Shown here: piece by piece, positions 4,111 to 47,615 of the stretch | Layout of the letters: every line of letters starts with the position of its first letter | Position numbering within the stretch: position 1 is the stretch's first letter | Origin: Histomonas meleagridis 2922-C6/04-290x | Lineage: Eukaryota; Protista; Parabasalia | Direction: 5' to 3' | DNA: 64,000 nucleotides | Assembly: GCA_020184695.1 (NCBI GenBank) | Contig: JAANOX010000280.1 | Span: 765,592 to 829,591, forward strand | Translations under genes and position numbers: made by a program | Notes under the pieces: model-generated | What the model saw: only the letters and a program-made list of their open reading frames with translations | Database searches by the model: none | Told to the model about the DNA's origin: nothing

Positions 4111-5781
<1,671 letters not shown>

Positions 5782-6118
5782 ATAAATAAATAAATAATAA
5801 ATGAAAAAAATTTTAATAATTTTGATTCAAAGTTAAATGTAACAAGAGTAACTCCCATGAGACATTATTGTTTTTCAAGGGATTTGATCTGATTTCATGA
5901 TCATAGGAGAACGTTAGATGCATGCCAAGTAAGCAAAAGTGCATCTTCACTTTTTCTGTCAAAAACTTCCTCGATAGACACTTTTCTGGATGACTTTTTG
6001 TGAAGAAATAAATTGACTTTTCGGTTGTGAAAAGTAATTTCACTCAAAATTGACACGTTTATTTTTTATTGTTTAACTCAATTAAACTTGAAAAAATCAT
6101 TTTGAAAACAATATCTTA

Positions 6119-8678
6119 ATGCTGCTGTCTCAGATCATTTTAAATGTAATATACATTGGATGCAATATTATGATATCATCAATTAATAAATTGAGAAAAA
6201 AAAAATTCTTATGGATTAAATTTAATACAAAAATTTATCGGCCTTTAAATATTAATTACAATTTGTTCAATTATGTAATATGTGCATGTCTTATATATCA
6301 TATTTTTACTGATTTTATGGAACTATTTTTAACATTTTTCAAATATTTTTTTTGCTTTAACCATTTTATTTCAAATATACACATAAACTTTAATATTTTA
6401 TTACATTATAGAACTATTTTAGATGATATAAACCTCTTATATTTTATTGATATAAAAAAATTTCATTCATTTCAAGAATTTTTCCCAAAAAAACTTCAAA
6501 TCAAATATAAAAATAAAAACAAATTATTTTCATTCATATTTTTAATATTTTTTGTTCATAATACATTCCAACTCAGTTTTGATGAAACAACTCAAACATT
6601 AACAATTTCTACTGATCTCGATTTTAACAATAAAGAATTCAAAGAAAGAGCTATTAATGTTATTATACAAGATGGAGTTAGTTATATTCCATATGAAGCA
6701 TTTGAATCATATTCTTTATTACAAAATATTACAATATCAAATACAGTCACATCAATTGGTGAATCAGCATTTCATTCATGTACATCACTGCAAGATATTA
6801 CAATTAATAACGTCACATCAATTGGTGAATCAGCATTTCGTTCATGTATTTCATTGCAAAATATTACAATTAATAACGTCACATCAATTGGTGAATCAGC
6901 ATTTCGTTCATGTATTTCATTGCAAAATACAATTAATAACGTCACATCAATTGGTGAATCAGCATTTCGTTCATGTATTTCATTGCAAGATATTACAATT
7001 AATAACGTCACATCAATTGGTGAATCAGCATTTCGTTCATGTATTTCATTGCAAAATATTACAATTAATAACGTCACATCAATTGGTGAATCAGCATTTC
7101 GTTCATGTATTTCATTGCAAAATATTACAATTAATAACGTCACATCAATTGGTGAATCAGCATTTCGTTCATGTATTTCATTGCAAGATATTACAATTAA
7201 TAACGTCACATCAATTGGTGAATCAGCATTTCGTTCATGTATTTCATTGCAAAATATTACAATTCCAAATACAGTTAAAACAATTCGTAGTTATACATTT
7301 CGAGAATGTTATAATTTGACGTCAATTACTATTGAAGAAGGAGTTGAAGAAATTTGTGATTCTGCATTTCGATCATGTATTTCATTACCAAATATTACAA
7401 TTCCAAATTCAATTATAATAATTTCTAACACATCATTTTCAGGATGTATAAAACTTCGAATGATAATCGTATCATTAAATAATTCGAAATATTCTAATTA
7501 TGATAATGATGGAATTCTTTATAACAAAAACATCACAGAACTTCATTGTTATCCAAATGGTAAAGAAACAATATCAATTCCAAACACTGTGACAACAATT
7601 CAATCATCAGCATTTGAAGGATCTTCAATACGAAATATTACAATTCCAAATACTATTAAAACGATTAGAACAAGAGCATTTTATTTATGTTCTAATTTGA
7701 CCACAGTTAATATTGAAGAAGGCGTTGAAGAAATTGGAGAATTAGCATTTTCAACATGTACTTCATTACGAAATATTACAATTCCAAGAACAATTAAAAC
7801 AATTGGAACAATGACATTTTACTCATGTTCTAATTTGTTTGCAATTAATATTGAAGAAGGCGTTGAAACAATTGGCGAATTAGCATTTTCAGGGTGTAAT
7901 AATCTCAAATGCATTTATTATTATGGTGAAACAGAACCAAATATCAGTTTAAATTCATTTGAGTCAGTTGAAACTATTGTAATTACATCAAATGCATATG
8001 AATCAAACACATTTGGGACATTAAATGTTTCACGAGGTACAACTATTGAAGGGTGTCGTCCATTGCCCACGAATTCATTCGCATCATCGCACTCATTCTC
8101 TAATACATTCACAAAATCAATGACATACGCAAATACAACCACATTCACATCATACGATGCCAACATCACTTTATCTGTTTCTAGTAATATAAATGTTACA
8201 GAAACATTTTCATTAACATTTACATTAATACTAACAAAAACAAATTCAATTTACACTTTAATTTCGAATTCATTTTTAGTTTCATTTGGATCCACAGATA
8301 ATATTTACATTCCGACATTAATAATATATTATGATTATACAATTGTTATGTATTCATATTATCTTAGTTTTTATTCCAATTTCTTTTTCAATTTTTAATT
8401 CAATCAGAAACAATTCCAAATAATAATAATAATAACAAAACACTTATCATATCGATTTGCACAGTAATTGCTGCAATTATTATCATCATTTTACTTATAA
8501 TTTTAATAATTAAAAATCAAGAATAAAAATTTAACAATGAAGAAATAACAAAAAAAGTTTTGAAGAGCAAAATGAATTTACTAATACTGAAACATTGGAA
8601 GCAATAATGAAAATATCTAATGTTAAAGAGGATCCATTTGCAACAGCTTTGCAAGAAGACAATAAATTCGCTTTATAA
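6119..8678 (+). CDS. BspA-like LRR surface protein with expanded 22-aa LRR array; 3' TM and EDPF tail disrupted (ORF stops at 8398)
   Basis: ORF 6119-8398 is near-identical to the copy at 3-1336. TM (KTLIISICTVIAAIIIIILL) and EDPFATALQEDNKFAL* are read in shifted frames at 8400-8678. The true start is uncertain. Confidence 0.8.
6742..7265 (+). repeat. Tandem 66-nt repeat, 8 near-identical units (one of 63 nt), encoding VTSIGESAFRSCISLQ[N/D]ITINN
   Basis: Read directly. The offset to the paralogue changes from 6551 to 7010 nt across the array (459 nt gain). Confidence 0.95.
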
Positions 8679-12452: not shown

Positions 12453-12846
12453 TATGAAGTAAAATTTATATATTTTAAAATTTTCCAAGTAATTCAAATT
12501 GTTTCTGTGTTGTGCAGTTCATGCATTATATTAAAATTTAAAACATTTGTTGAATACGTAACTTAATTGGAATTATTGAAAAGTGTTTATAACTGAGAAA
12601 AAAATATATAAAATAAAACATTTATTAATATTATTATTTAGTGCTTATTCATAATGCTCATACCACTAAATAAATTGGAGTTACTTAACGTTTGTGAATT
12701 TTGTTGATTTGTATTTTCATTTTGTGAATTATTTACATTTACATTATTATTAACGTTTCGATTCGTTGCCAAATTACGTTTTGGATTTCGTTGAATTGTT
12801 TTCGAAAGCCATTGCGCGCTTTGTGTTTCTGATGTTCGACTTCGAT
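12234..12846 (+). repeat. 613-bp direct duplication, copy 2
   Basis: Matches 8901-9513. Confidence 0.93.
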
Positions 12847-14484
12847 TTCGATACATTTCAATCGATATTTTAATAATATTACAAAGTTCGATTTGTGTTT
12901 TTGGTGAACAAATTTTATTTGAAACAATTTCTGATGCAATTGGAACAATATATTTCATACGTAATGTGATCGTAGGCTGAAGGTTTCGAAGAATTTCGGT
13001 GATAATTTCGGATAATTCGATACTATTTTGGCGATTCCATGACGCTGAAATGCGCGGAATGATTTCTTCAGTAAATTTATTGTGATTTACTTTAGGTAAA
13101 CATTCTTTTAATAATGAAATACTACAATTAATAATATTATTGTTAGTCGATGTAGAAAGATATTCGACAAGTGACGGAACAATTTCTTCTTCGATCTTTT
13201 GTCCTGTTAATTTGTTGACTAATATTTGAAATTCTTGTGCACTTTCTTTTTGTAATTGTTCTTGTTCACTTTTAATCGATGTTTCAATAATTGGATAACA
13301 AATTTCATAAATTCGTTCTTCTGAAATATTTTCGACAATAACAGAAAAATATCGTAAAAAGATCAAATTGATTTCATATGGTTTAACAATCGTAAACATT
13401 GGATAAAGTGGTAATACAATTAACTCATAAAAATCTCGTTTATCAAACGTTTTACCAATTTCAAATATAATCGGAATTAATATATTCGAATAAAGAATTT
13501 CATTCTTAATTTCTTGAATGAAAAATTCTAAAAATTTGTTTTGTAAAATTCGAATAGAGAATTCGTTAAGCGTTTTCGATATTCCACAATAAAAATTATA
13601 TTTGTCTTCTTGCGTTTTAGTTAATATCACTTCGAAATATCGTAACGACTTAATATAAACATTATCAAATAACGGTGAATGAAGTATAAAATTAAATGAC
13701 GGACGCTTTTCGGAGTTAACATTCAAGCATGCAATAACCATGTCGCGTAATATCTTGGGAATATTGCTTTGATAAAGATTTGGTGTGCGAACCGATTCTT
13801 CAATGCGCTTCGGAGTCGGCTCTTCCAATACATTCGATCCTTTGATGAGCGTGCCGATGATACAGCCATAACTAAAGACATCTGTCTTAAATGTGCATTG
13901 CGAATTATTATAATATTCTGGTGAAATATAATTAATCGGCGGTTGGAAGTATGTAACAGATTTCCAGTCGCCCATACGCGGAAGTGATTCCCCATTCTCA
14001 TGAATAAAACGATTACTAAATGTAAATAAACAAATCTTAGTATCCATACTTTTCGTTAAACAAATATCACTAATAGATAAGCCAAACATTACAATGTGCG
14101 CTGAACTATGTAAAAATCTAATGTTTTACATAATTGATATGAAATATAAATAATGTCATTAGTAGATAAATAACTATCATATTCTAAACACGTTTCAATA
14201 GGCTCTGCTGCAAAATTTAAAGCTTTAATTGAATCTGAAAGCTCAAGAATTTTTAAAACACCTGGATGAAAAATTCGACGAACAGAGTATATAGATGAAA
14301 GTGTTTCTGTTAAAAATCGTTCTTGATCTGCTTTAGTTCCGATACTTTGAATAATATCGTAATCAATTTCCCAAAGACTAACTTCTTCTAATGTAGTTTT
14401 ATGCTTAGCACGACTAACTTTCCAACATGATGTTTTAAATAATGGTACTTGATCTATATAATTTACTGAAATTCCTGCTCCCAT
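12638..14484 (-). CDS. SCYL: SCY1-like pseudokinase with HEAT-like region; one homopolymer frameshift near 14112
   Basis: Starts MGAGIS (myristoylation-like). ORFs 14089-14589 and 12638-14089 join as LDFLHSSAHIVMFGLS if one T is added. Motifs HPGVLKI, YISPE, KTDVFSYG. Confidence 0.75.
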
Positions 14485-14877
14485 TCTTGTAACGGTTTGG
14501 TGGAGGACGTTTATATGTATCTTCTGTTTGACGATAAATTCACTATGTGTTTGCACAAAACCATTAATAAATATTAGAGTAAAACTCAAAGAATTGATTT
14601 GTTACCTATTCGAAATAAGTATCTTCAATTAATGATAACTATTAAATAATTTCAAATTTGAATTAATTTTTTATATAACTTAAATATACTCAAACGACCT
14701 ATGTTTATGTATCGACATTAAAACATTAAGCAATAATTATTAAATAAGTTCATATTTTTTATGATACTTTTTACTTTGGTTTTAGTGGATGTTAACAGGT
14801 GATCATTTTATTGTAATTTGAATGATTTACGTCATTCAAAAAATTCACTGCTGTGTTAAAATGGTGACCATTTTCAA

Positions 14878-24888: not shown

Positions 24889-25151
24889 CTTTTTATTTTA
24901 AATTTGTTCCAAAGAATTAAAAAATTAATGTTATTTTATTTTTATATCTTTCGTTGAACTCATTTACATAATTTATTTAATTCGAATGTTCTTCAACATT
25001 ACGAATGAATACTTTACATTGCATATTGAAATTTCTGTTAAAAACGAATAAAAATTGGGCCCCATAAAATTGAATCAAGAATGATCGCATTAGAACCCTC
25101 GAACAAAGGGTAATTTTGAATCGTCAAATTGAACGATACAGAAAAAATATT

Positions 25152-25158
25152 TCATTTT
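25152..25158 (+). promoter_or_regulatory. Inr-like element TCATTTT
   Basis: Starts 12 nt upstream of ATG 25164 and matches the trichomonad TCA(+1)Y(T/A) initiator. Confidence 0.5.
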
Positions 25159-25163
25159 CTTTA

Positions 25164-27806
25164 ATGCAAAACTTACTCACTTTGGAAAAGGAAATTTTTC
25201 AACTGGATGAAAATAATCTAGAGACATGCGTTGAATCAGTTATCCAATTATTTGGCTCATTTTCTGAAAATCCATATTCTTATAATCTAATCATTTGTCA
25301 ACTTGTTTATTATTCTTTTGTTTCAAAAACACAAGACGCCCAAGTTTATATCAGTTTTTTGAATGAAATTGACAAACAAGAAGAAAAATGTTCAACAGTT
25401 GAACATAAGATCATCACCATTTTTTCGCAATTTCTTCTTCGTATTAAATCCAAAGAATCTATTTATCTTCTTGAGAAAATGCTTGAAAATAAACTAATAG
25501 ATCCCGAATTAATCAAAAACAAAGCTACGTTATACTTTTCGCATTATAAAACTAAAGATGATATACCAAAAGAAAATTTACAATACAGTAATCAATTCTT
25601 TACAAACAAAGAAGAACTTGAAAAAGATGATTGGAAACTTCATAAAAAGCTTGTAGAAGATGGAGTTAATCCATTAGATATTGCACAAGCACTTCGTAAT
25701 GATGACATTGATAAACTTCAAGAAATTGCAACACAAAGTAACTTTAATTTTAATCAATCAATTGAACCATCACTTTATGAAAGGTTTTCATATGTAAGTA
25801 GATATAATGTTACACTTATTGATTATGCAGCATTTTTCGGATCAATTAAATGTTTCAAATATTTAATGTTAAATGGCGCGAATTTACAAAGCACTGGAAA
25901 ATATGCAGTATTAGGTGGAAATCATGAAATTATACATTTATGTGAGCAAAGCAATGCTTCTTTTGTCGGATCTTATGAAGCTGCAATTGAATTACATCGA
26001 AATGAAATATTTTATTATCTTTATGATCAAAAATTAATCGAAATTAATTTAATCGATTTGGGTATTAAATGTATCCAATTTTCTAATTTTGAAATTCTTT
26101 CGTTCCTTATGAATGAAGGATTAACTATTAATGAGAAAATTATTGAAGAAGCTGCTAAAGTTGGAAATATTTATCTCTTCAATATGTTTAATAAAGAAAA
26201 TAAAGTAATTAATGAACTTTTGCAATTTTCGGTTCAATCAGGTAATATTGAACTTGTTCAACAAATTATAAAAATGGACGGAATTAAAATAAATGAAATT
26301 TATTATCATTTATTGATGTTAAAATTTATATTTCTGGTGTTTATATTAGATTTAAAATATAGCACTTATAATCGCTTGCGAAAATGAATGTACTGATGTT
26401 GTTAAATTACTTCTTAAACAAGAAGGAATTGATATCAATTTCAAAAATGTTTTTTTAAATTAATTTGAAATTTGTTTATAATTTTTGAAATTTATTTTTT
26501 ATATTTGATAATTCACCTCTTATTATTGCATGTAAGAATGGATATTATGATGTTATGCAAATTCTTCTTGAACAAGATGGAATTGATGTAAATATTAAAA
26601 ATATTTTTATCATTTTATTTAAAGTTTATATTAAGAAATCGAAGTTTTATATTATTATTCGGAATTAATTTGTGTTACATAAAACAGCGCTAATTATATC
26701 ATCTGAAAGTGGTTATTCTAACATTGTGAAATTACTTCTTATGCATAAAGGAATTGATATTAATGCACAAGATAATTTTTATATGAAAAAATTGAAGTTA
26801 ACATTTAATATTTGGAATTTAATCAAATAATTTTGTACTTCTTTAATGTTTGCATGTGATAATGGATATACCGAAGTTGTTAAATTACTTCTTGCTGAAC
26901 CTGCATTAGATGTTAATCTTAAAGATATATATTTTTATTACTTCAAATTTGCTTCTTTTATTTGATGATTTTTTGAGTTATGTAATAATTATTTTCTTTA
27001 TTTTGGGTAGCATTTACTTATGCATGTAGAAGAAATAATGATCAAATTATTAAATTACTTCTTGGAAAAGAAGGAATTGATATTAATGTAAAAGATATTA
27101 ATTTAATAATTTCATAGTTTGATCAATATTTTTACTTTTTCATTTTTAATTTTGGAGTTAATTTATTTTGTTGCTAACACCATTTATTTGTGCTTGTCGT
27201 GATGGAAATATTGAAACTGTAAAAATACTTCTTGAGCAAAAGGAAATTGATATAATGGCTAAAAATGTTTATTTATTTCTTTTAATATTTCTTGGATTTT
27301 TATAACGTTTAAATTATGCTTTTGGTATTTATTTAAATGATTTTGGACAGGAATTGTTTATGCATGCAGAAATAAACATAATGAAATTGTTAAATTGTTA
27401 CTTGAACAAGAAGGTTTCGATGTAAATATGAAAGATATTTATGTTGATAATTTAACGTTTATTTTAATTTTTTAATGTTTTATTGGAATTTTTGGAGTTT
27501 GTTTAAAGGATTTTATACTTTGCTAATTCATGCATGTGATATCGGAAATTTGGAAGTTGTTAAAATACTTGTTGAACAAGATAAAATTGATATTAATATT
27601 AAAGATGTTATTTTATTTAGTTTGAAGTTTTAATCAAAGATTTGCTATTTGAATCATTAATTTGAAATTTATATTTAATGTTTCTTACAGCAATTACACA
27701 TGCATTTGAAAAAGGTCACATAGACATTGTAAAGTTCCTCATCCAACAAAAAGGAATAGAAGTAGAGGAACGCATTAGAGCAAACATTGAAAACCAAAAT
27801 AATTAA
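25164..27806 (+). CDS. DUF3447-type ankyrin-repeat protein whose nine C-terminal ankyrin cores are separated by non-coding-like spacers (~690 aa if spacers are removed)
   Basis: N-terminal part has LRNDDIDKLQ...TLIDYAAFFGSIKCFKYL. Ankyrin cores start at 26359, 26513, 26684, 26837, 27007, 27177, 27347, 27517 and 27687 (e.g. TSLMFACDNGYTEVVKLLLAEPALDVNLKD). Final stop at 27804-27806. Confidence 0.8.
26304..27686 (+). other. Array of nine U-rich intervening spacers in the ankyrin loops (KD-to-T gaps of 55, 64, 81, 63, 80, 80, 80, 80, 80 nt)
   Basis: Gaps are 26304-26358, 26449-26512, 26603-26683, 26774-26836, 26927-27006, 27097-27176, 27267-27346, 27437-27516 and 27607-27686. Each breaks the frame or contains an in-frame stop. 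Confidence 0.85.
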
Positions 27807-27897
27807 AAAGCTCATCAAAACTATCTTTGTATTTTTATTTATCATATGATCATATAACGAATATTATTGATTTTGATTGTTGAGTATTTTCCTTATG

Positions 27898-27900
<3 letters not shown>

Positions 27901-27926
<26 letters not shown>
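27901..27926. repeat. (AT)n microsatellite
   Basis: 13 AT units. Confidence 0.9.
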
Positions 27927-27933
<7 letters not shown>

Positions 27934-28139
27934 TATAATATTACATTATATTATGTTATTCGATATTCATAATGAAAAAGGCTTGACAAAATGTTTTTCG
28001 ATTGTTTTTTTGAAAATTATTCCTATATTTCATAATGAAATTTTAAGCAATATATTGGCCATTTTATTGTATGCCTTGTAATTTTGCTAATTTTTTGAAT
28101 TGCTCAGTATATCTTGATAAAGTCAATAATGGGTTTTTC

Positions 28140-28649: not shown

Positions 28650-29766
28650 TTAGAAACACTTACGATGAACAATTCCCGGTCCTGATTCTTCGTATTCTTC
28701 ACGTGTTATAACCATCTGTGGGAATGTAGAGAGTGACGCAAGTTTACATCCTCCAATCCACGCAGAATATTTGCGTTCTGGTGGTGAAACAACATTGATC
28801 TTCATCGTAGTTGGTGCAAGATTAAGCATTTCGTTCTGCAAATCCTTCAAACATCGTGTTGCCTCCTGATAGAAGAATGTTCCCAAAGAGATCCTTGCGG
28901 ACATCAGCGCCGCATTCCATAATGGATGCAAAAAGATATTGATCAATGCCGTCGAAGTCAAATCCTCCAAAATATGGTCTAAAAAGAAGTTCCGTACATC
29001 TGAAGCGCTCATTTCCAATGCTGATGACGTCACCATTTGGAAGTGCGTATGAGATATCACATTCGGATGTTGTGTCTGCTTTTGCAAGTTCTTCATCATA
29101 ATCAAGTGCAACGTATGCAATGATTTCTTTGATGTCACGAACAATTTTCCTTTCATTGAATGTGGTAAGAAGATAGCCACGTTGGATAAGGATCTTTTGG
29201 AGATATGACGTAATGTCACGACCGGCAAGATTGAAACCCTTAATGGCGTGCGGGAAAGAGTAACCTTCGTAAATTGGAACTGCGAAAGAAGCACCATCAC
29301 CTGACTCTAAAACAACACCAGTGACACAATCTGTTGAATAAAGGGAAAGAACAGGTTGCGTACAAATGTAGCATGCTGGAACATTGAATGTTTCGAAATG
29401 AATTTGAAGCATCTTTTCACGCATCCCTTTTGGACTCGTTGGAGCTTCTGTAAGAAGAACTGCATACTCTGCTGGATCAACACGTAATTCGTTGTAGAAG
29501 GCATGGCACCATATCTTTTCCATTTTGTCCCAGTTTGTAACAAAACCATGTTCAATCGGGTACTTGAGGATAAGAAGACCTGCCTTATCGAAAGCTTCAT
29601 TACCAATATATGAATCGCGTAAATTGGAATTCCAATATGTTGCAACATATTTTGGGAAGCCAACAACAGAAGGGAAAATTGCGCGTGGTGCTTCTTCATT
29701 AGAAAAACCGACCTTACACGTATCAGAACCATTGTCAATAATTATTGTTTGATTGTTTTCATCCAT
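28650..29766 (-). CDS. ACT: Divergent actin with an 11-nt deletion frameshift at about 28833-28843
   Basis: [56 protein letters not shown]. The reading switches frame at GFAER/LQNEM. Confidence 0.9.
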
Positions 29767-34732: not shown

Positions 34733-34814
34733 GGCACGATGGCCGAGTGGTTAAGGCGTGGGATTTGAGTCCCCATGGGTTTATCCCTCATCAGTTCGAA
34801 TCTGGTTCGTGTCG
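34733..34814 (+). tRNA. tRNA-Ser(TGA)
   Basis: Acceptor GGCACGA/TCGTGTC, discriminator G, D-loop AGTGGTTAA, anticodon TGA at 34766-34768, long variable arm, GTTCGAAT T-loop. Confidence 0.9.
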
Positions 34815-44987: not shown

Positions 44988-46194
44988 TCATAACCAATTG
45001 TCTTCATCTTCTTTCACAATATCTTCAACTAAACTATTTACTTCTTCGATTTGCTTTGTACTTGACGTTGTCGTGTCCTTAAATTGTAACTTTGATTTCG
45101 ATTTTTCTTTCTTGTTATTACTTCTCACTAAAAATATAACAATTCCAACAATGACCAAAACAAATGCAAATGATCCGCAAATAATTCCAATCAAAGCATT
45201 TGTCGTAATTCCATTTGGTGAATTTTCATTCGAAGTATGAAACATTGTAAAGAAATTGGAATAATAATTATAATAAGTCGAATAAATAACAATTGTGTAA
45301 CTGTAATAAATAAATTCTGTTTCAATATATGAAAATGTTGAATTATTTATATATAATGAAAATGTTTTCGTTTTTTGTTTCATAAACAGTTAATGAATGT
45401 GTAATTGATAATGTAACTGTTAATGTATATGAAAATGATAATGAAATATCACTTTGTAACGACGCAGTAAATGTATTTGAATTAGAAAAAGTATTTGATT
45501 TTGTGAGTGTATTTGATTGACTAAATGAATGTGTTGGAAGTGGTTCGCATATTCCTTCTGCAGATTCGCTAACAACACCCAAACTTCCAAAATGATCCTC
45601 TACATATGTTGAATATGTGATAACACTTGTTGAAACATTATAAAATGCACCTTCACCAATATTTGGTTCTTTATCTCCATAATAATAAATGCATTCAAGA
45701 TTATAACAATTCCCAAATGCTGAACCTCCAATTTCTATTATTCCATTTCCAAGTGTTAATATCCTTAAATTAGAACATAATGCAAATGCTGAATTTCCAA
45801 TTGTTGTAACTGAATTTGGAATTGTAATGTTTTTGATTGATGAACACAATGAAAATGATGAACCACCAATTTCTGTAACATTTCCTCCAAATATAATCGT
45901 TTCTAAATTAAAACATGAAAAAAACACATTAATTCCAATATTTGTGACTGAGTTACCAAAATTAACTGAAACAACTGAAGGCCATTCTGAAAATACACTG
46001 TTTGGAATTGAATAAATATTTTCACTGATAATTATACATTTTGTTATGTTTTGATATTTATCAATATCTTCAAATTCATTTGAATTCATGATTGAAAGTG
46101 TTGAATTATCATAGTTAAATATTTGCAATGAATTTGCAAAAAACAGAACAAATACAAAAATAGTTTCAATTTTTTTCTTTTCTTTTACTTTCAT
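44988..46194 (-). CDS. BspA-like protein with native ATG and signal peptide (MKVKEKKKIETIFVFVLFFANS), tail ending EDEDNWL; one homopolymer frameshift near 45375
   Basis: ORFs 45343-46689 and 44988-45383. The A6 run (A5 in the paralogue) causes the shift. Confidence 0.8.
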
Positions 46195-47615
46195 TTCATT
46201 AGATAGAAATTTAGGTTCAAAAATTACTTTATTTTTTAAATACAAAAAAAATCCCAAAATAAACATTAGGACCTGAAACATTTCATTTAGCTTAAGCATT
46301 TCTTTTTTAAAATTATTTTTCATTGATATTGAGGCATTTTCTTTCTGTGTAAAATTATCAAATGCCAAAGAAAAGAATTTAAAATTATGCTTACCAAATG
46401 GAATTAACAGTGGTGGCAAAGGGAAATTGTAACGATGCATTACTGCATTAAAGTAAAATCGATTTGATTTATTATTTCTTAACATAAAAAAATTTGTTGT
46501 TTGAAGGAAAGATCGGTTGTTTCTATTAGAATATGAGTCTCTTTTGGAATCAAATGCAAGGTAAGTTTTTCTTTTTGGTGTTTGAAAAATAGATAATTGA
46601 TGGTTAAAAATCGCCGAGTCTGAATTTATTGGTAAAAATTGAAATGAGCAAAAGAGTAGTACAGGGCAAATCACGAAGAGGTACCACATTTTTGGTGAAT
46701 GTTCAGAGACTTAACAATAAATCAGTGAAAAACGGAACAGGGAGCCTCAACCGTCTAATCTTTGGTTCGCATCGTTTGTAATACTTTTGATGACGTGAGT
46801 TTCAGTGTTTTTGCAATCGGAAGATGAACACGAATGGAAATGAGCCAAACCTGTATTGAAAAGTGACAGCAAATACCCTCATTTAACTGACAAAATGAGC
46901 AAAAAACGAAATAAAGAATATAATATCGGCGATGATGCGCTTGAAGGAACTCAAAAAGTTTCAAATACAATCAGAAAAAATTATATTGAATTTTGAATGT
47001 ATGAAAACCGGTAATATTTCGAACCGCCATCGTTATTTCAATACTGCTTCAATGAAATATGTTATTTGACACGCAGAAGCAAATTTCACTTGACTTTCCT
47101 GTTAAAAATATATCAAACACCAAAAACAGAAAACAAATGTAGTGTATAATTAATACATATATTATGATTTATGCATTATTTAATCAAAAAATCTATACTT
47201 ACAAAAATAAAAGAGCAAATAATAATTTCATTAAATAACTGCAAAATGAATATATATTTATTGCAATATCAAATGTATTTTCTCATCGTTAATTCTTGAT
47301 TTTCATCAGCTCATAATATTTTAAAATGTGTATCAAAAAATGATAAAATTAAAACTTGTAAAAATTGTACGTTAACAGACCGTTTATTTATCTGGAACAG
47401 CAGAATTAAAAAAAATGATTCAAATTGAATAGTTAGAGAGTTTCAACTAAATAAAAATTAATATTCGAATCACAACTCAATGTTTTACATAATGTTCATA
47501 TGAAATTAATGAAAAATTTAGAGTATCACCGGATATTGTTGTTTAACATTGTCTGAAAAAGAAATATTGAACACAAATTGAAATTATGAACTTTTTGTGA
47601 ACAAACCGTTGTTAG

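What the first reader, a model, noticed from the sequence alone, without database searches (positions are those of the whole stretch)
26304..27806. Ankyrin gene interrupted in every repeat by non-GT-AG spacers: candidate non-canonical splicing or recoding system
Seen in the sequence: nine consecutive ankyrin units (eight 30-codon cores T/S-x-L...G-I-D-I-N-x-K-D/N plus the final unit) have no internal stop or indel. Each is preceded by a U-rich gap at the same beta-hairpin position. Gap lengths are 55, 64, 81, 63, 80, 80, 80, 80 and 80 nt, against about 12 nt expected for a 34-aa repeat. Seven gaps shift the frame, and the two in-frame gaps (81 and 63 nt) carry an in-frame TAA. Two gaps (26449-26512, 27267-27346) contain no AG, and none has the ACTAAC branch motif. 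Established: parabasalid spliceosomal introns are rare and carry GT...ACTAAC-N-CAG signals. Inference: intact, diverged cores next to stop-ridden spacers imply the cores are translated, so about 43-69 nt per gap must be removed or skipped by an uncharacterised mechanism (non-canonical intron excision, RNA processing, or ribosome bypass). I do not know of a description of this, but I cannot search the literature.
Basis: partly seen in the sequence, partly recalled or inferred. Interest (0 to 1): 0.93.

Follow-up and report, generated by a model that had tools for sequence, protein, structure and literature searches.

The report
Single codons between 17-base removable inserts
In this parabasalid ankyrin gene, each loop between repeats is written one codon at a time, with the codons separated by 17-base U-rich inserts that lack normal splice signals, and public RNA data show all the inserts are cut out to give one clean reading frame, which matches no described kind of intron.

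Summary
In detail: nine stop-free ankyrin cores are separated by 61-81-nt T-rich gaps that break the frame and lack GT-AG and ACTAAC signals.

RNA-derived contigs from three runs in two studies carry the cores joined, while DNA contigs keep the gaps.

Each gap is not one spacer. It is three or four 17-nt elements (two are 18 nt), each followed by a single codon of the beta-hairpin. This layout was first proposed in unchecked first-stage notes on other pieces of the same genome, so the scan had found it before.

I tested the layout here. It predicts exactly the left end, the number of unplaced letters and the right start of the RNA pieces at all eight testable gaps. It also predicts the one junction whose letters were shown, CAAGATAA.

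Removing 33 elements gives one 692-aa ORF with nine 34-aa repeats. Element consensus is RTTTATTT-N5-ATTT. None of the 30 elements can be written with an AG end.

The same arrays occur in Histomonas meleagridis paralogues and in a metagenomic relative. I found no description in the literature. The excising machinery is unknown.

The parts
25164..26297 (+). First long exon: N-terminal region with DUF3447 and degenerate ankyrin units, ending ...K-I-N-E
   Evidence: ORF. Pfam DUF3447 (E = 2e-11) and Ank_3. RNA contigs X4 record 9 and X5 record 15 cover 26100-26297 and stop matching the genome exactly at 26297.
26298..26358 (+). Gap 0, layout inferred only: element 26298-26314, codon GAT 26315-17, element 26318-26335 (18 nt), codon GGT 26336-38, element 26339-26355, codon AAT 26356-58
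   Evidence: RNA pieces end at 26297, so the next RNA letter is not A. That fits GAT and rules out the alternative ATG reading. The right side of this joint was not shown. This layout keeps the frame.
26359..26448 (+). Ankyrin core 1 (IALIIAC...DINFKN)
   Evidence: X9 record 19 covers 26401-26449.
26449..26506 (+). Gap 1: element 26449-26466 (18 nt), GAA 26467-69, element 26470-26486, GAA 26487-89, element 26490-26506. GATAAT 26507-12 is continuous with core 2. Hairpin EEDN.
   Evidence: The model predicts left end 26449, 5 unplaced letters and right start 26507. The RNA pieces show the same.
26507..26602 (+). Two hairpin codons plus ankyrin core 2 (SPLIIAC...DVNIKN)
   Evidence: RNA pieces cover 26507-26603 in X4, X5 and X9 with 0 other letters.
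26603..26683 (+). Gap 2: element 26603-26620 (18 nt), AAA 26621-23, element 26624-40, GAA 26641-43, element 26644-60, GGA 26661-63, element 26664-80, AAA 26681-83. Hairpin KEGK.
   Evidence: Predicted 26603 / 8 letters / 26681 equals observed. X4 record 11 (26574-26710) is an unprocessed contig across this gap, at depth 11.9 against 33-43 for the processed pieces beside it.
26684..26776 (+). Ankyrin core 3 (TALIISS...DINAQD) plus the first hairpin codon AAT
   Evidence: RNA piece 26681-26776 in X9 record 19.
26777..26836 (+). Gap 3: element 26777-93, GAA 26794-96, element 26797-26813, GGA 26814-16, element 26817-33, TGT 26834-36. Hairpin NEGC, three elements only.
   Evidence: Predicted 26776 / 6 letters / 26834 equals observed.
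26837..26926 (+). Ankyrin core 4 (TSLMFAC...DVNLKD)
   Evidence: RNA pieces cover 26834-26926 in X4, X5 and X9.
26927..27006 (+). Gap 4: element 26927-43, CAA 26944-46, element 26947-63, GAT 26964-66, element 26967-83, AAT 26984-86, element 26987-27003, TGG 27004-06. Hairpin QDNW.
   Evidence: Letter-level proof. The RNA contig has CAAGATAA between 26926 and 27003 (table 5c). That equals CAA+GAT+AA of the three isolated codons, followed by T+TGG.
27007..27096 (+). Ankyrin core 5 (VAFTYAC...DINVKD)
27097..27176 (+). Gap 5: element 27097-27113, ATA 27114-16, element 27117-33, ACT 27134-36, element 27137-53, GGA 27154-56, element 27157-73, CTA 27174-76. Hairpin ITGL.
   Evidence: Predicted 27098 / 7 letters / 27174 equals observed. 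The joint is seen in X4 and X5 and in no contig of DNA run X1.
27177..27266 (+). Ankyrin core 6 (TPFICAC...DIMAKN)
   Evidence: RNA pieces cover 27174-27266.
27267..27346 (+). Gap 6: element 27267-83, AAT 27284-86, element 27287-27303, AAC 27304-06, element 27307-23, GGT 27324-26, element 27327-43, TGG 27344-46. Hairpin NNGW.
   Evidence: Predicted 27266 / 8 letters / 27343 equals observed.
27347..27436 (+). Ankyrin core 7 (TGIVYAC...DVNMKD)
   Evidence: RNA pieces cover 27343-27437 in X4, X5 and X9.
27437..27516 (+). Gap 7: element 27437-53, AAC 27454-56, element 27457-73, AAT 27474-76, element 27477-93, GGA 27494-96, element 27497-27513, TAT 27514-16. Hairpin NNGY.
   Evidence: The joint 27437 to 27514 with 8 letters between is seen in X4, X5 and X9, and in 0 contigs of DNA run X1. 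The prediction is identical.
27517..27606 (+). Ankyrin core 8 (TLLIHAC...DINIKD)
   Evidence: RNA pieces cover 27514-27607.
27607..27686 (+). Gap 8: element 27607-23, GAA 27624-26, element 27627-43, GCT 27644-46, element 27647-63, GAA 27664-66, element 27667-83, CTT 27684-86. Hairpin EAEL.
   Evidence: Predicted 27607 / 8 letters / 27684 equals observed.
27687..27823 (+). Last ankyrin unit and C-terminus (TAITHAF...ENQNN), stop at 27804-27806, and at least 17 nt of 3' UTR
   Evidence: RNA pieces cover 27684-27823 (X5) and 27684-27814 (X9), on the same contigs as exons 6-8.

Best explanation
Shown: the spacers are not single units. Each is an array of three or four 17-nt elements (2 of the 30 RNA-checked elements are 18 nt). 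The elements are U-rich with consensus RUUUAUUU-N5-AUUU, all sit between codons (phase 0), and each is followed by one codon of the four-residue ankyrin beta-hairpin.

The genomic DNA carries the elements. The transcripts lack them and keep the isolated codons. The mature message is therefore one 692-codon ORF encoding a DUF3447 domain followed by nine 34-residue ankyrin repeats.

Inferred: the elements are cut out of the pre-mRNA and the flanks rejoined, one element at a time, by a machinery that measures length. It reads a weak 5' RUUU and 3' UUU signal rather than GU...AG and a branch motif.

My best guess for the agent (about 45%) is a divergent or specialised spliceosome working in intron-definition mode, as it does for the 15-17-nt introns of Stentor and Mikrocytos. 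A dedicated non-spliceosomal cut-and-join system is nearly as likely (about 35%).

The arrangement is inherited. An ancestral repeat with four elements in its hairpin was amplified by repeat and gene duplication in the Histomonas lineage.
For:: RNA-derived contigs of X4 and X5 (2023) and X9 (2013, another study) hold consecutive cores with 0 mismatches, separated by 5-8 letters that do not lie beside the joint. The period in the RNA is 102 nt. DNA contigs of X1 run straight through the gaps, and no X1 contig shows the RNA-supported joints.

the 17-nt/single-codon layout predicts the left end, number of unplaced letters and right start at 8 of 8 gaps. It reproduces the only junction letters shown (CAAGATAA).

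removing the elements gives one ORF with a single terminal stop and perfect 34-aa repeats. Five of the eight RNA-checked hairpins have Gly at the consensus position. Retained codons are 21% T against 62% in the elements (p = 1e-13).

the termini are GT/AT...TT. None of the 30 elements can be written with an AG end under any equivalent cut.

arrays occur only in this gene within the window and in no shuffle. They are also found in H. meleagridis paralogues (L002, L004) and in a metagenomic relative (L001), with hairpins such as KYGK, KSGK, KDGL and NNGK.

X4 record 11 is an unprocessed copy at lower depth, as expected for a precursor.
Against: The RNA evidence comes from assembled Logan contigs, not raw reads, and the runs are only guessed to be RNA.

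Junction letters were displayed for one gap only. The other seven rest on coordinates and letter counts.

Gap 0 is not verified on its right side.

For a spliceosome: half the elements start with A, about 77% end in TT, there is no branch motif, and the exons are only 3 nt long. No spliceosome is known to accept this.

For any mechanism: the elements carry very little sequence information, so how the sites are chosen is unexplained.

Element-free DNA at low abundance cannot be formally excluded, because contigs drop rare variants.
Confidence: 0.85

Rival explanations
1. A dedicated non-spliceosomal RNA excision-ligation system removes the elements. This would be an endonuclease plus ligase, perhaps with a length-measuring protein or a small guide RNA. 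The reading shares the anatomy of the best explanation and differs only in the agent.
For: None of the 30 elements has a GT..AG form, and A starts as many elements as G. No parabasalid branch motif is present. Known parabasalid introns are at least 23 nt and keep GT, (A/T)CTAAC and AG (PMC12316389). The length is strictly 17 nt. The elements are confined to one gene family in this window.
Against: No candidate enzyme or guide has been identified. The elements have no stable fold that could serve as an endonuclease substrate (z from -0.8 to +1.0). About 43% of the elements begin with GU, and 17 nt lies within the range of the shortest spliceosomal introns (PMC10245619).
Confidence: 0.35
2. The transcripts come from element-free DNA. 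This could be a second, processed copy of the gene or somatic DNA elimination in part of the population, so no RNA processing would be needed.
For: Contig data show presence, not absence, and DNA contigs drop rare variants (tool notes).
Against: DNA run X1 gives single contigs through five successive gaps (27071-27890) and no contig with the RNA-supported joints. The RNA contigs continue into this locus's own 3' UTR and upstream exon. An unprocessed form is present in the RNA library. Hundreds of such genes would each need a twin copy (notes; paralogues).
Confidence: 0.04
3. The RNA is made without the elements. RNA polymerase would skip each 17-nt A-rich template stretch (programmed transcriptional skipping) rather than the elements being cut out afterwards.
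For: The elements are U-rich, so the RNA-DNA hybrid would be weak. Length and period are fixed.
Against: There are no direct repeats at the element borders to allow realignment, since the equivalent-cut ambiguity is only 0-2 nt. An element-containing RNA-library contig exists (X4 record 11). There is no precedent for skips of this length.
Confidence: 0.04
4. The gene is a decaying pseudogene, or each gap is a single degenerate intron, or the spacers stay in the mRNA and ribosomes bypass them.
For: From sequence alone the gaps look like non-coding junk full of stops.
Against: The RNA contigs lack the elements and keep four templated codons per gap. A single excision cannot produce CAAGATAA at gap 4. 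The cores, the hairpin codons and the 17-nt length are conserved in another species.
Confidence: 0.02

Closest known systems
Ultra-short spliceosomal introns of Mikrocytos mackini (16-17 nt) and Stentor coeruleus (15 nt)
   Same: The length is extremely short and almost invariant, which suggests length itself is part of recognition. They are removed from the RNA. Source: PMC10245619; the Stentor length is as cited in PMC12316389.
   Different: From my own knowledge, those introns have canonical GT-AG ends. PMC10245619 says only that they share highly conserved sequences. They sit singly in ordinary exons. Here the ends are GT/AT...TT, the sequence is weakly conserved, and three or four elements stand in tandem with only 3 nt between them.
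Trichomonas vaginalis type B introns (23-25 nt)
   Same: The phylum is the same (Parabasalia). They are short and T-rich, and some lie in repeat-protein genes (PMC12316389).
   Different: They keep GT, a TCTAAC branch motif and AG. There is at most one or two per gene and only about 63 in the genome. The elements here are shorter, lack all three signals, and number 33 in one gene.
3-nt micro-exons of animals and plants
   Same: A single codon is kept as an exon between two removed segments.
   Different: From my own knowledge, those are isolated, flanked by long canonical introns, and usually regulated. Here four single-codon exons stand in a row, each 17 nt apart, in every repeat.
Euglenid nonconventional introns and Fritillaria non-canonical introns
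   Same: They are intervening sequences without GT-AG that are removed efficiently from nuclear mRNA (PMC12501133, PMC11170887 for Euglena; Fritillaria from my own knowledge).
   Different: From my own knowledge, the Euglena ones vary in length and depend on pairing between the intron ends, and the Fritillaria ones are of ordinary length with AG-AC and similar ends. Here the length is fixed at 17 nt and there is no detectable fold.
Translational bypass elements (T4 gene 60; mitochondrial byps of Magnusiomyces)
   Same: Many short frame-breaking inserts interrupt coding sequence and are ignored during expression (my own knowledge).
   Different: Those stay in the mRNA and are skipped by the ribosome. 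Here the RNA itself lacks the inserts.
Kinetoplastid U-deletion RNA editing
   Same: U-rich sequence present in the DNA is missing from the mature mRNA.
   Different: From my own knowledge, that editing removes only U residues in mitochondrial transcripts under guide RNAs. Here 38% of the removed bases are not U, and the gene sits among ordinary nuclear-type eukaryotic genes.

Membership tests
U2-type spliceosomal intron | GT (GC) at the 5' end and AG at the 3' end | tested here: not met
   13 of 30 elements start GT and none ends AG under any equivalent cut. The nine elements with unambiguous cuts are AT..TT x5, GT..TT x3 and GT..TG x1.
U2-type spliceosomal intron | Branch-point motif (in parabasalids ACTAAC or TCTAAC close to the 3' end) | tested here: not met
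   No ACTAAC in any gap. One search finds nothing in the region. Only an enriched A at position 14 is seen: 16 of 28 and 21 of 36 in other loci.
U2-type spliceosomal intron | Removed from the transcript with exact joining of the flanks | tested here: met
   8 of 8 gaps fit, and one junction is confirmed at letter level.
U2-type spliceosomal intron | Lariat intermediate and dependence on snRNPs | not testable with these tools
   Needs branch mapping or splicing inhibition in culture.
U12-type (AT-AC) intron | ATATCCTT at the 5' site, TCCTTAAC branch site, AC or AG end | tested here: not met
   The element matrix shows ATTT/GTTT starts, almost no C (3.6%), and TT ends.
tRNA/HAC1-type endonuclease-ligase intron | Bulge-helix-bulge or paired stem-loops presenting both cut sites | tested here: not met
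   five gaps with flanks fold no better than shuffles (z -0.76, +1.04, -0.57, +0.13, -0.27). A 17-nt element that is 62% U cannot form such a structure alone.
Euglenid nonconventional intron | Variable length, with the ends brought together by base pairing | tested here: not met
   Length is fixed at 17 nt (28 of 30). No significant structure was found.
Translational bypass element | Insert retained in the mature mRNA | tested here: not met
   RNA contigs lack the elements.
Kinetoplastid-type U-deletion editing | Only U residues removed | tested here: not met
   The removed elements are 27% A, 8% G and 3.5% C.
Internal eliminated sequence (DNA-level removal) | Absent from the DNA that is transcribed | tested here: inconclusive
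   DNA contigs hold the elements and no joined form, and an unprocessed RNA-library contig exists. Contigs cannot exclude a rare element-free DNA.
Ankyrin-repeat protein with DUF3447 (parabasalid family) | DUF3447 domain plus tandem ankyrin repeats of about 33 residues with the hairpin consensus D-x-x-G-x-T-x-L | tested here: met
   Pfam DUF3447 and Ank hits on the first exon. The processed ORF has nine 34-residue repeats, and five of the eight RNA-checked hairpins have G at the consensus position. Homologues are named from H. meleagridis and Tritrichomonas foetus.

The most novel reading that the evidence does not exclude
Histomonas and its relatives possess a previously unknown, length-measuring RNA excision-ligation system that is either non-spliceosomal or a second, radically altered spliceosome. 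It decodes genes in which loop codons are interleaved one by one with 17-nt U-rich inserts. Because every micro-exon is one codon, skipping any of them stays in frame. The system could therefore also generate combinatorial variants of the ankyrin target-binding loops.
Probability: 0.35. Interest if true: 0.97.

Novelty: categorically new. Interest (0 to 1): 0.94.

Why it matters
If confirmed on raw reads and at the bench, this would be a new way of writing a eukaryotic gene. Runs of single-codon exons are separated by fixed 17-nt inserts that carry none of the signals used by any known intron class, yet they are removed accurately many times per transcript.

It bears on three questions:
- What is the minimal information and geometry needed for RNA cut-and-join reactions?
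- Can a spliceosome work without GU-AG and with 3-nt exons?
- How do such elements spread through a repeat family?

It also has a practical consequence. The published H. meleagridis annotation reports at most one intron per gene (PMC8529796), and the family members I retrieved are annotated only as N-terminal ORFs of roughly 420-530 aa. A large protein family of a poultry pathogen, and probably of its relatives, is therefore likely mis-annotated. Standard splice-aware aligners and gene finders will miss it.

Tried and rejected
1. A single non-canonical intron per gap. Rejected because the RNA keeps 5-8 letters that do not lie next to either side.

2. A contiguous micro-exon within the gap, centred on the conserved TTTGGARTT motif. 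Rejected because CAAGATAA is not contiguous in gap 4 and the motif-based exon contradicts the observed left ends. The motif turned out to be the end of element 3, the Gly codon and the start of element 4.

3. Junction letters copied from the end of core 3, where a 10-nt match lies at 26768. This is a coincidence of hairpin codons.

4. Fetching the RNA-contig proteins from the protein collections to read more junctions. Nothing usable came back, and one search was swamped by generic ankyrin proteins.

5. A stable RNA fold of the gaps. None found.

6. Isolated 17-nt elements interrupting other long ORFs of the window in phase 0. None found.

7. Other ankyrin-core genes in the window. None found.

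8. The canonical parabasalid 3' intron motif in the window. Only one weak match, below chance expectation.

9. Literature searches for 17-nt introns, Histomonas introns or ankyrin, ultra-short introns, single-codon exons and non-canonical introns in parabasalids. No description of this found.

10. The frame break in the neighbouring actin-like gene as another element. It is a 1-nt shift with no insert.
Full report
**What is in the sequence**

The window is AT-rich (about 30% GC) and densely packed with long intron-free ORFs. An ORF at 25116-26387 encodes a DUF3447/ankyrin N-terminal region.

Downstream of it, three-frame translation shows nine further ankyrin cores without stops, in changing frames. 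The gaps between them are T-rich and measure 61, 64, 81, 63 and 5 x 80 nt, counted from the K-D/N codon to the T/S-position codon.

Both in-frame gaps carry an in-frame TAA. Two gaps have no AG. No gap has ACTAAC.

**Organism**

The closest named homologues are Histomonas meleagridis proteins (34-57% identity, paralogues) and a Tritrichomonas foetus protein. The H. meleagridis genome paper describes two strains sequenced in 2021, 28% GC and megabase contigs (PMC8529796). That fits the two 2021 DNA samples that hold this stretch.

The window is therefore most likely H. meleagridis.

**RNA evidence**

RNA-labelled runs hold only 0.38 of the sampled words of 26300-27810, about what the cores alone would give.

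I laid contigs of two 2023 runs (X4, X5), one 2013 run from another study (X9) and one DNA run (X1) on 26100-27890.
- The DNA contigs run uninterrupted through the gaps. One contig spans 27071-27890.
- The RNA contigs consist of the cores only, with 0 mismatches, in order and on single contigs. For example, X5 record 18 holds 27174-27266, 27343-27437, 27514-27607 and 27684-27823.
- The distance between successive core ends in the RNA is 102 nt, which is 34 codons.
- Between neighbouring pieces each contig has 5-8 letters that do not lie beside the joint.
- Neither of the two RNA-supported joints listed in the table (27098 to 27174 and 27437 to 27514) is seen in a DNA contig.
- One X4 contig (26574-26710, depth 11.9) is unprocessed, as expected for a precursor or a little DNA.

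**Solving the extra letters**

I first tried a single micro-exon. It failed. The eight letters shown for gap 4, CAAGATAA, are not contiguous anywhere nearby.

First-stage notes on other pieces of the same genome (for example s1-309504) propose single codons separated by 17-nt inserts. I tested that idea here.

Gap 4 reads 17 nt, CAA, 17 nt, GAT, 17 nt, AAT, 17 nt, TGG. That gives CAAGATAA followed by TTGG, exactly the RNA letters and the start of the next RNA piece at 27003.

A script then derived, for all eight gaps with RNA on both sides, three values that a maximal-extension aligner should report: the left end, the number of unplaced letters and the right start. All eight triples equal the observed ones.

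The layout comprises 30 elements, 28 of 17 nt and 2 of 18 nt (the 18-nt ones are the first elements of gaps 1 and 2). The retained hairpins are EEDN, KEGK, NEGC, QDNW, ITGL, NNGW, NNGY and EAEL.

Gap 0 is supported only on its left side. Its layout (17, GAT, 18, GGT, 17, AAT) is inferred.

**Consequences of the layout**

Removing the 33 elements gives one ORF from the ATG at 25164 to the stop at 27804-27806. It has 692 codons and nine exact 34-residue repeats. This is the organism's own processed message as far as the RNA data show, not a repair.

The TTTGGARTT motif, also noted in s1-298730, is simply the end of element 3, the Gly codon and the start of element 4.

**Anatomy of the elements**

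- Consensus: R1 T2 T3 T4 A5 T6 T7 T8 N9-13 A14 T15 T16 T17, with 61% T and 3.6% C.
- All elements lie between codons (phase 0).
- Termini: GT or AT (13 each) at the start and TT (23 of 30) at the end. None can be written with AG under any equivalent cut. Only 5 contain AG at all.
- Retaining an element would give a stop within 19 codons in 24 of 30 cases.
- Retained codons are purine-rich, 21% T against 62% in the elements (p = 1e-13).
- The gaps have no RNA fold better than shuffles.

**Distribution**

A matrix built from this gene finds period-20 arrays only here in the window, and none in 20 shuffles. No isolated element interrupts another long ORF in the window.

The same arrays occur downstream of the N-terminal ORFs of two H. 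meleagridis paralogues (L002, L004). They also occur on a metagenome scaffold from a relative whose N-terminal region is about 50% identical (L001). Hairpins there include YNGM, KSGK, KYGK, KDGL, NNGK and KHEQ, each followed directly by the T/S-x-L core, and the element consensus is the same.

The T. foetus homologue has contiguous repeats. The architecture is therefore inherited within the Histomonas lineage and maintained, including its 17-nt length.

Many first-stage notes report it elsewhere in this genome. Those notes are unchecked.

**Mechanism**

Shown: the elements are in the DNA, are absent from the RNA, and the flanks are joined exactly.

Inferred: post-transcriptional excision, one element at a time, by a machinery that measures 17 nt. 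A single excision cannot leave four separated codons.

A divergent spliceosome is my first guess (about 45%). Spliceosomes do handle introns of 15-17 nt in Stentor and Mikrocytos (PMC10245619), and about 43% of the elements start with GU.

The arguments against it are strong. Half the elements start with A, most end in UU, there is no branch motif, the exons are 3 nt, and known parabasalid introns are at least 23 nt with GT, (A/T)CTAAC and AG (PMC12316389). A dedicated non-spliceosomal system is therefore almost as likely (about 35%).

The other readings fare worse:
- Transcriptional skipping and element-free DNA are each given about 4%.
- Bypass, pseudogene and one-intron-per-gap readings are contradicted.

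**Comparison and novelty**

The elements work like introns but fail the defining tests of every class I could check. These are U2-type, U12-type, tRNA/HAC1-type and Euglena nonconventional introns, U-deletion editing, bypass elements and eliminated DNA (this last one inconclusive).

Nine literature searches found no description. The genome paper reports at most one intron per gene. I rate the finding categorically new in architecture, with the caveat that the enzyme may prove to be a modified spliceosome.

**Caveats**

- The RNA evidence is from assembled contigs of runs only guessed to be RNA.
- Junction letters were shown for one gap only.
- Raw reads, long cDNA and bench tests are needed.

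Noticed in passing
window 28650-29766 (- strand): An actin-family gene (Pfam Actin E = 9e-86 for the first 314 codons) changes frame by one base near 28835-28860, so its conserved C-terminus lies in another frame. There is no insert and no 17-nt element. It could be an assembly indel, a pseudogene or a real frameshift.
   Followed up: partly
L002 about 5300-6600 (H. meleagridis WSYJ01000186.1): A paralogue has what looks from its translation like a transposase ORF, not checked against any family library, between the N-terminal ORF and its ankyrin repeats. It also has a stop inside one core, so it is probably a disrupted copy that still keeps 17-nt arrays.
   Followed up: no
window 26574-26710, RNA run X4: One RNA-library contig runs unprocessed through gap 2 at about a third of the depth of the processed pieces. 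It is either a precursor RNA or a little genomic DNA. Partly processed forms could reveal the order of removal.
   Followed up: no
L003 (protein P0003, ENA metagenome contig): In this relative the first hairpin after the N-terminal region is contiguous (..SKN-VMFES-ALMKAC..) and the ORF only breaks at the next hairpin. Elements can therefore be absent from individual hairpins, as at the first site of gap 3 and the last site of gap 1 here.
   Followed up: no
window 12638-14589 (-) and 44988-46689 (-): These are pairs of adjacent or overlapping ORFs on one strand in different frames. They could be separate genes, frameshifts or other interruptions.
   Followed up: no
window 34733-34814 (+): A tRNA gene, the only Rfam match in the window at the gathering threshold.
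   Followed up: no
window 27901-27954: An (AT)n / ATATAATATT microsatellite lies about 100 nt downstream of the ankyrin gene's stop codon.
   Followed up: no
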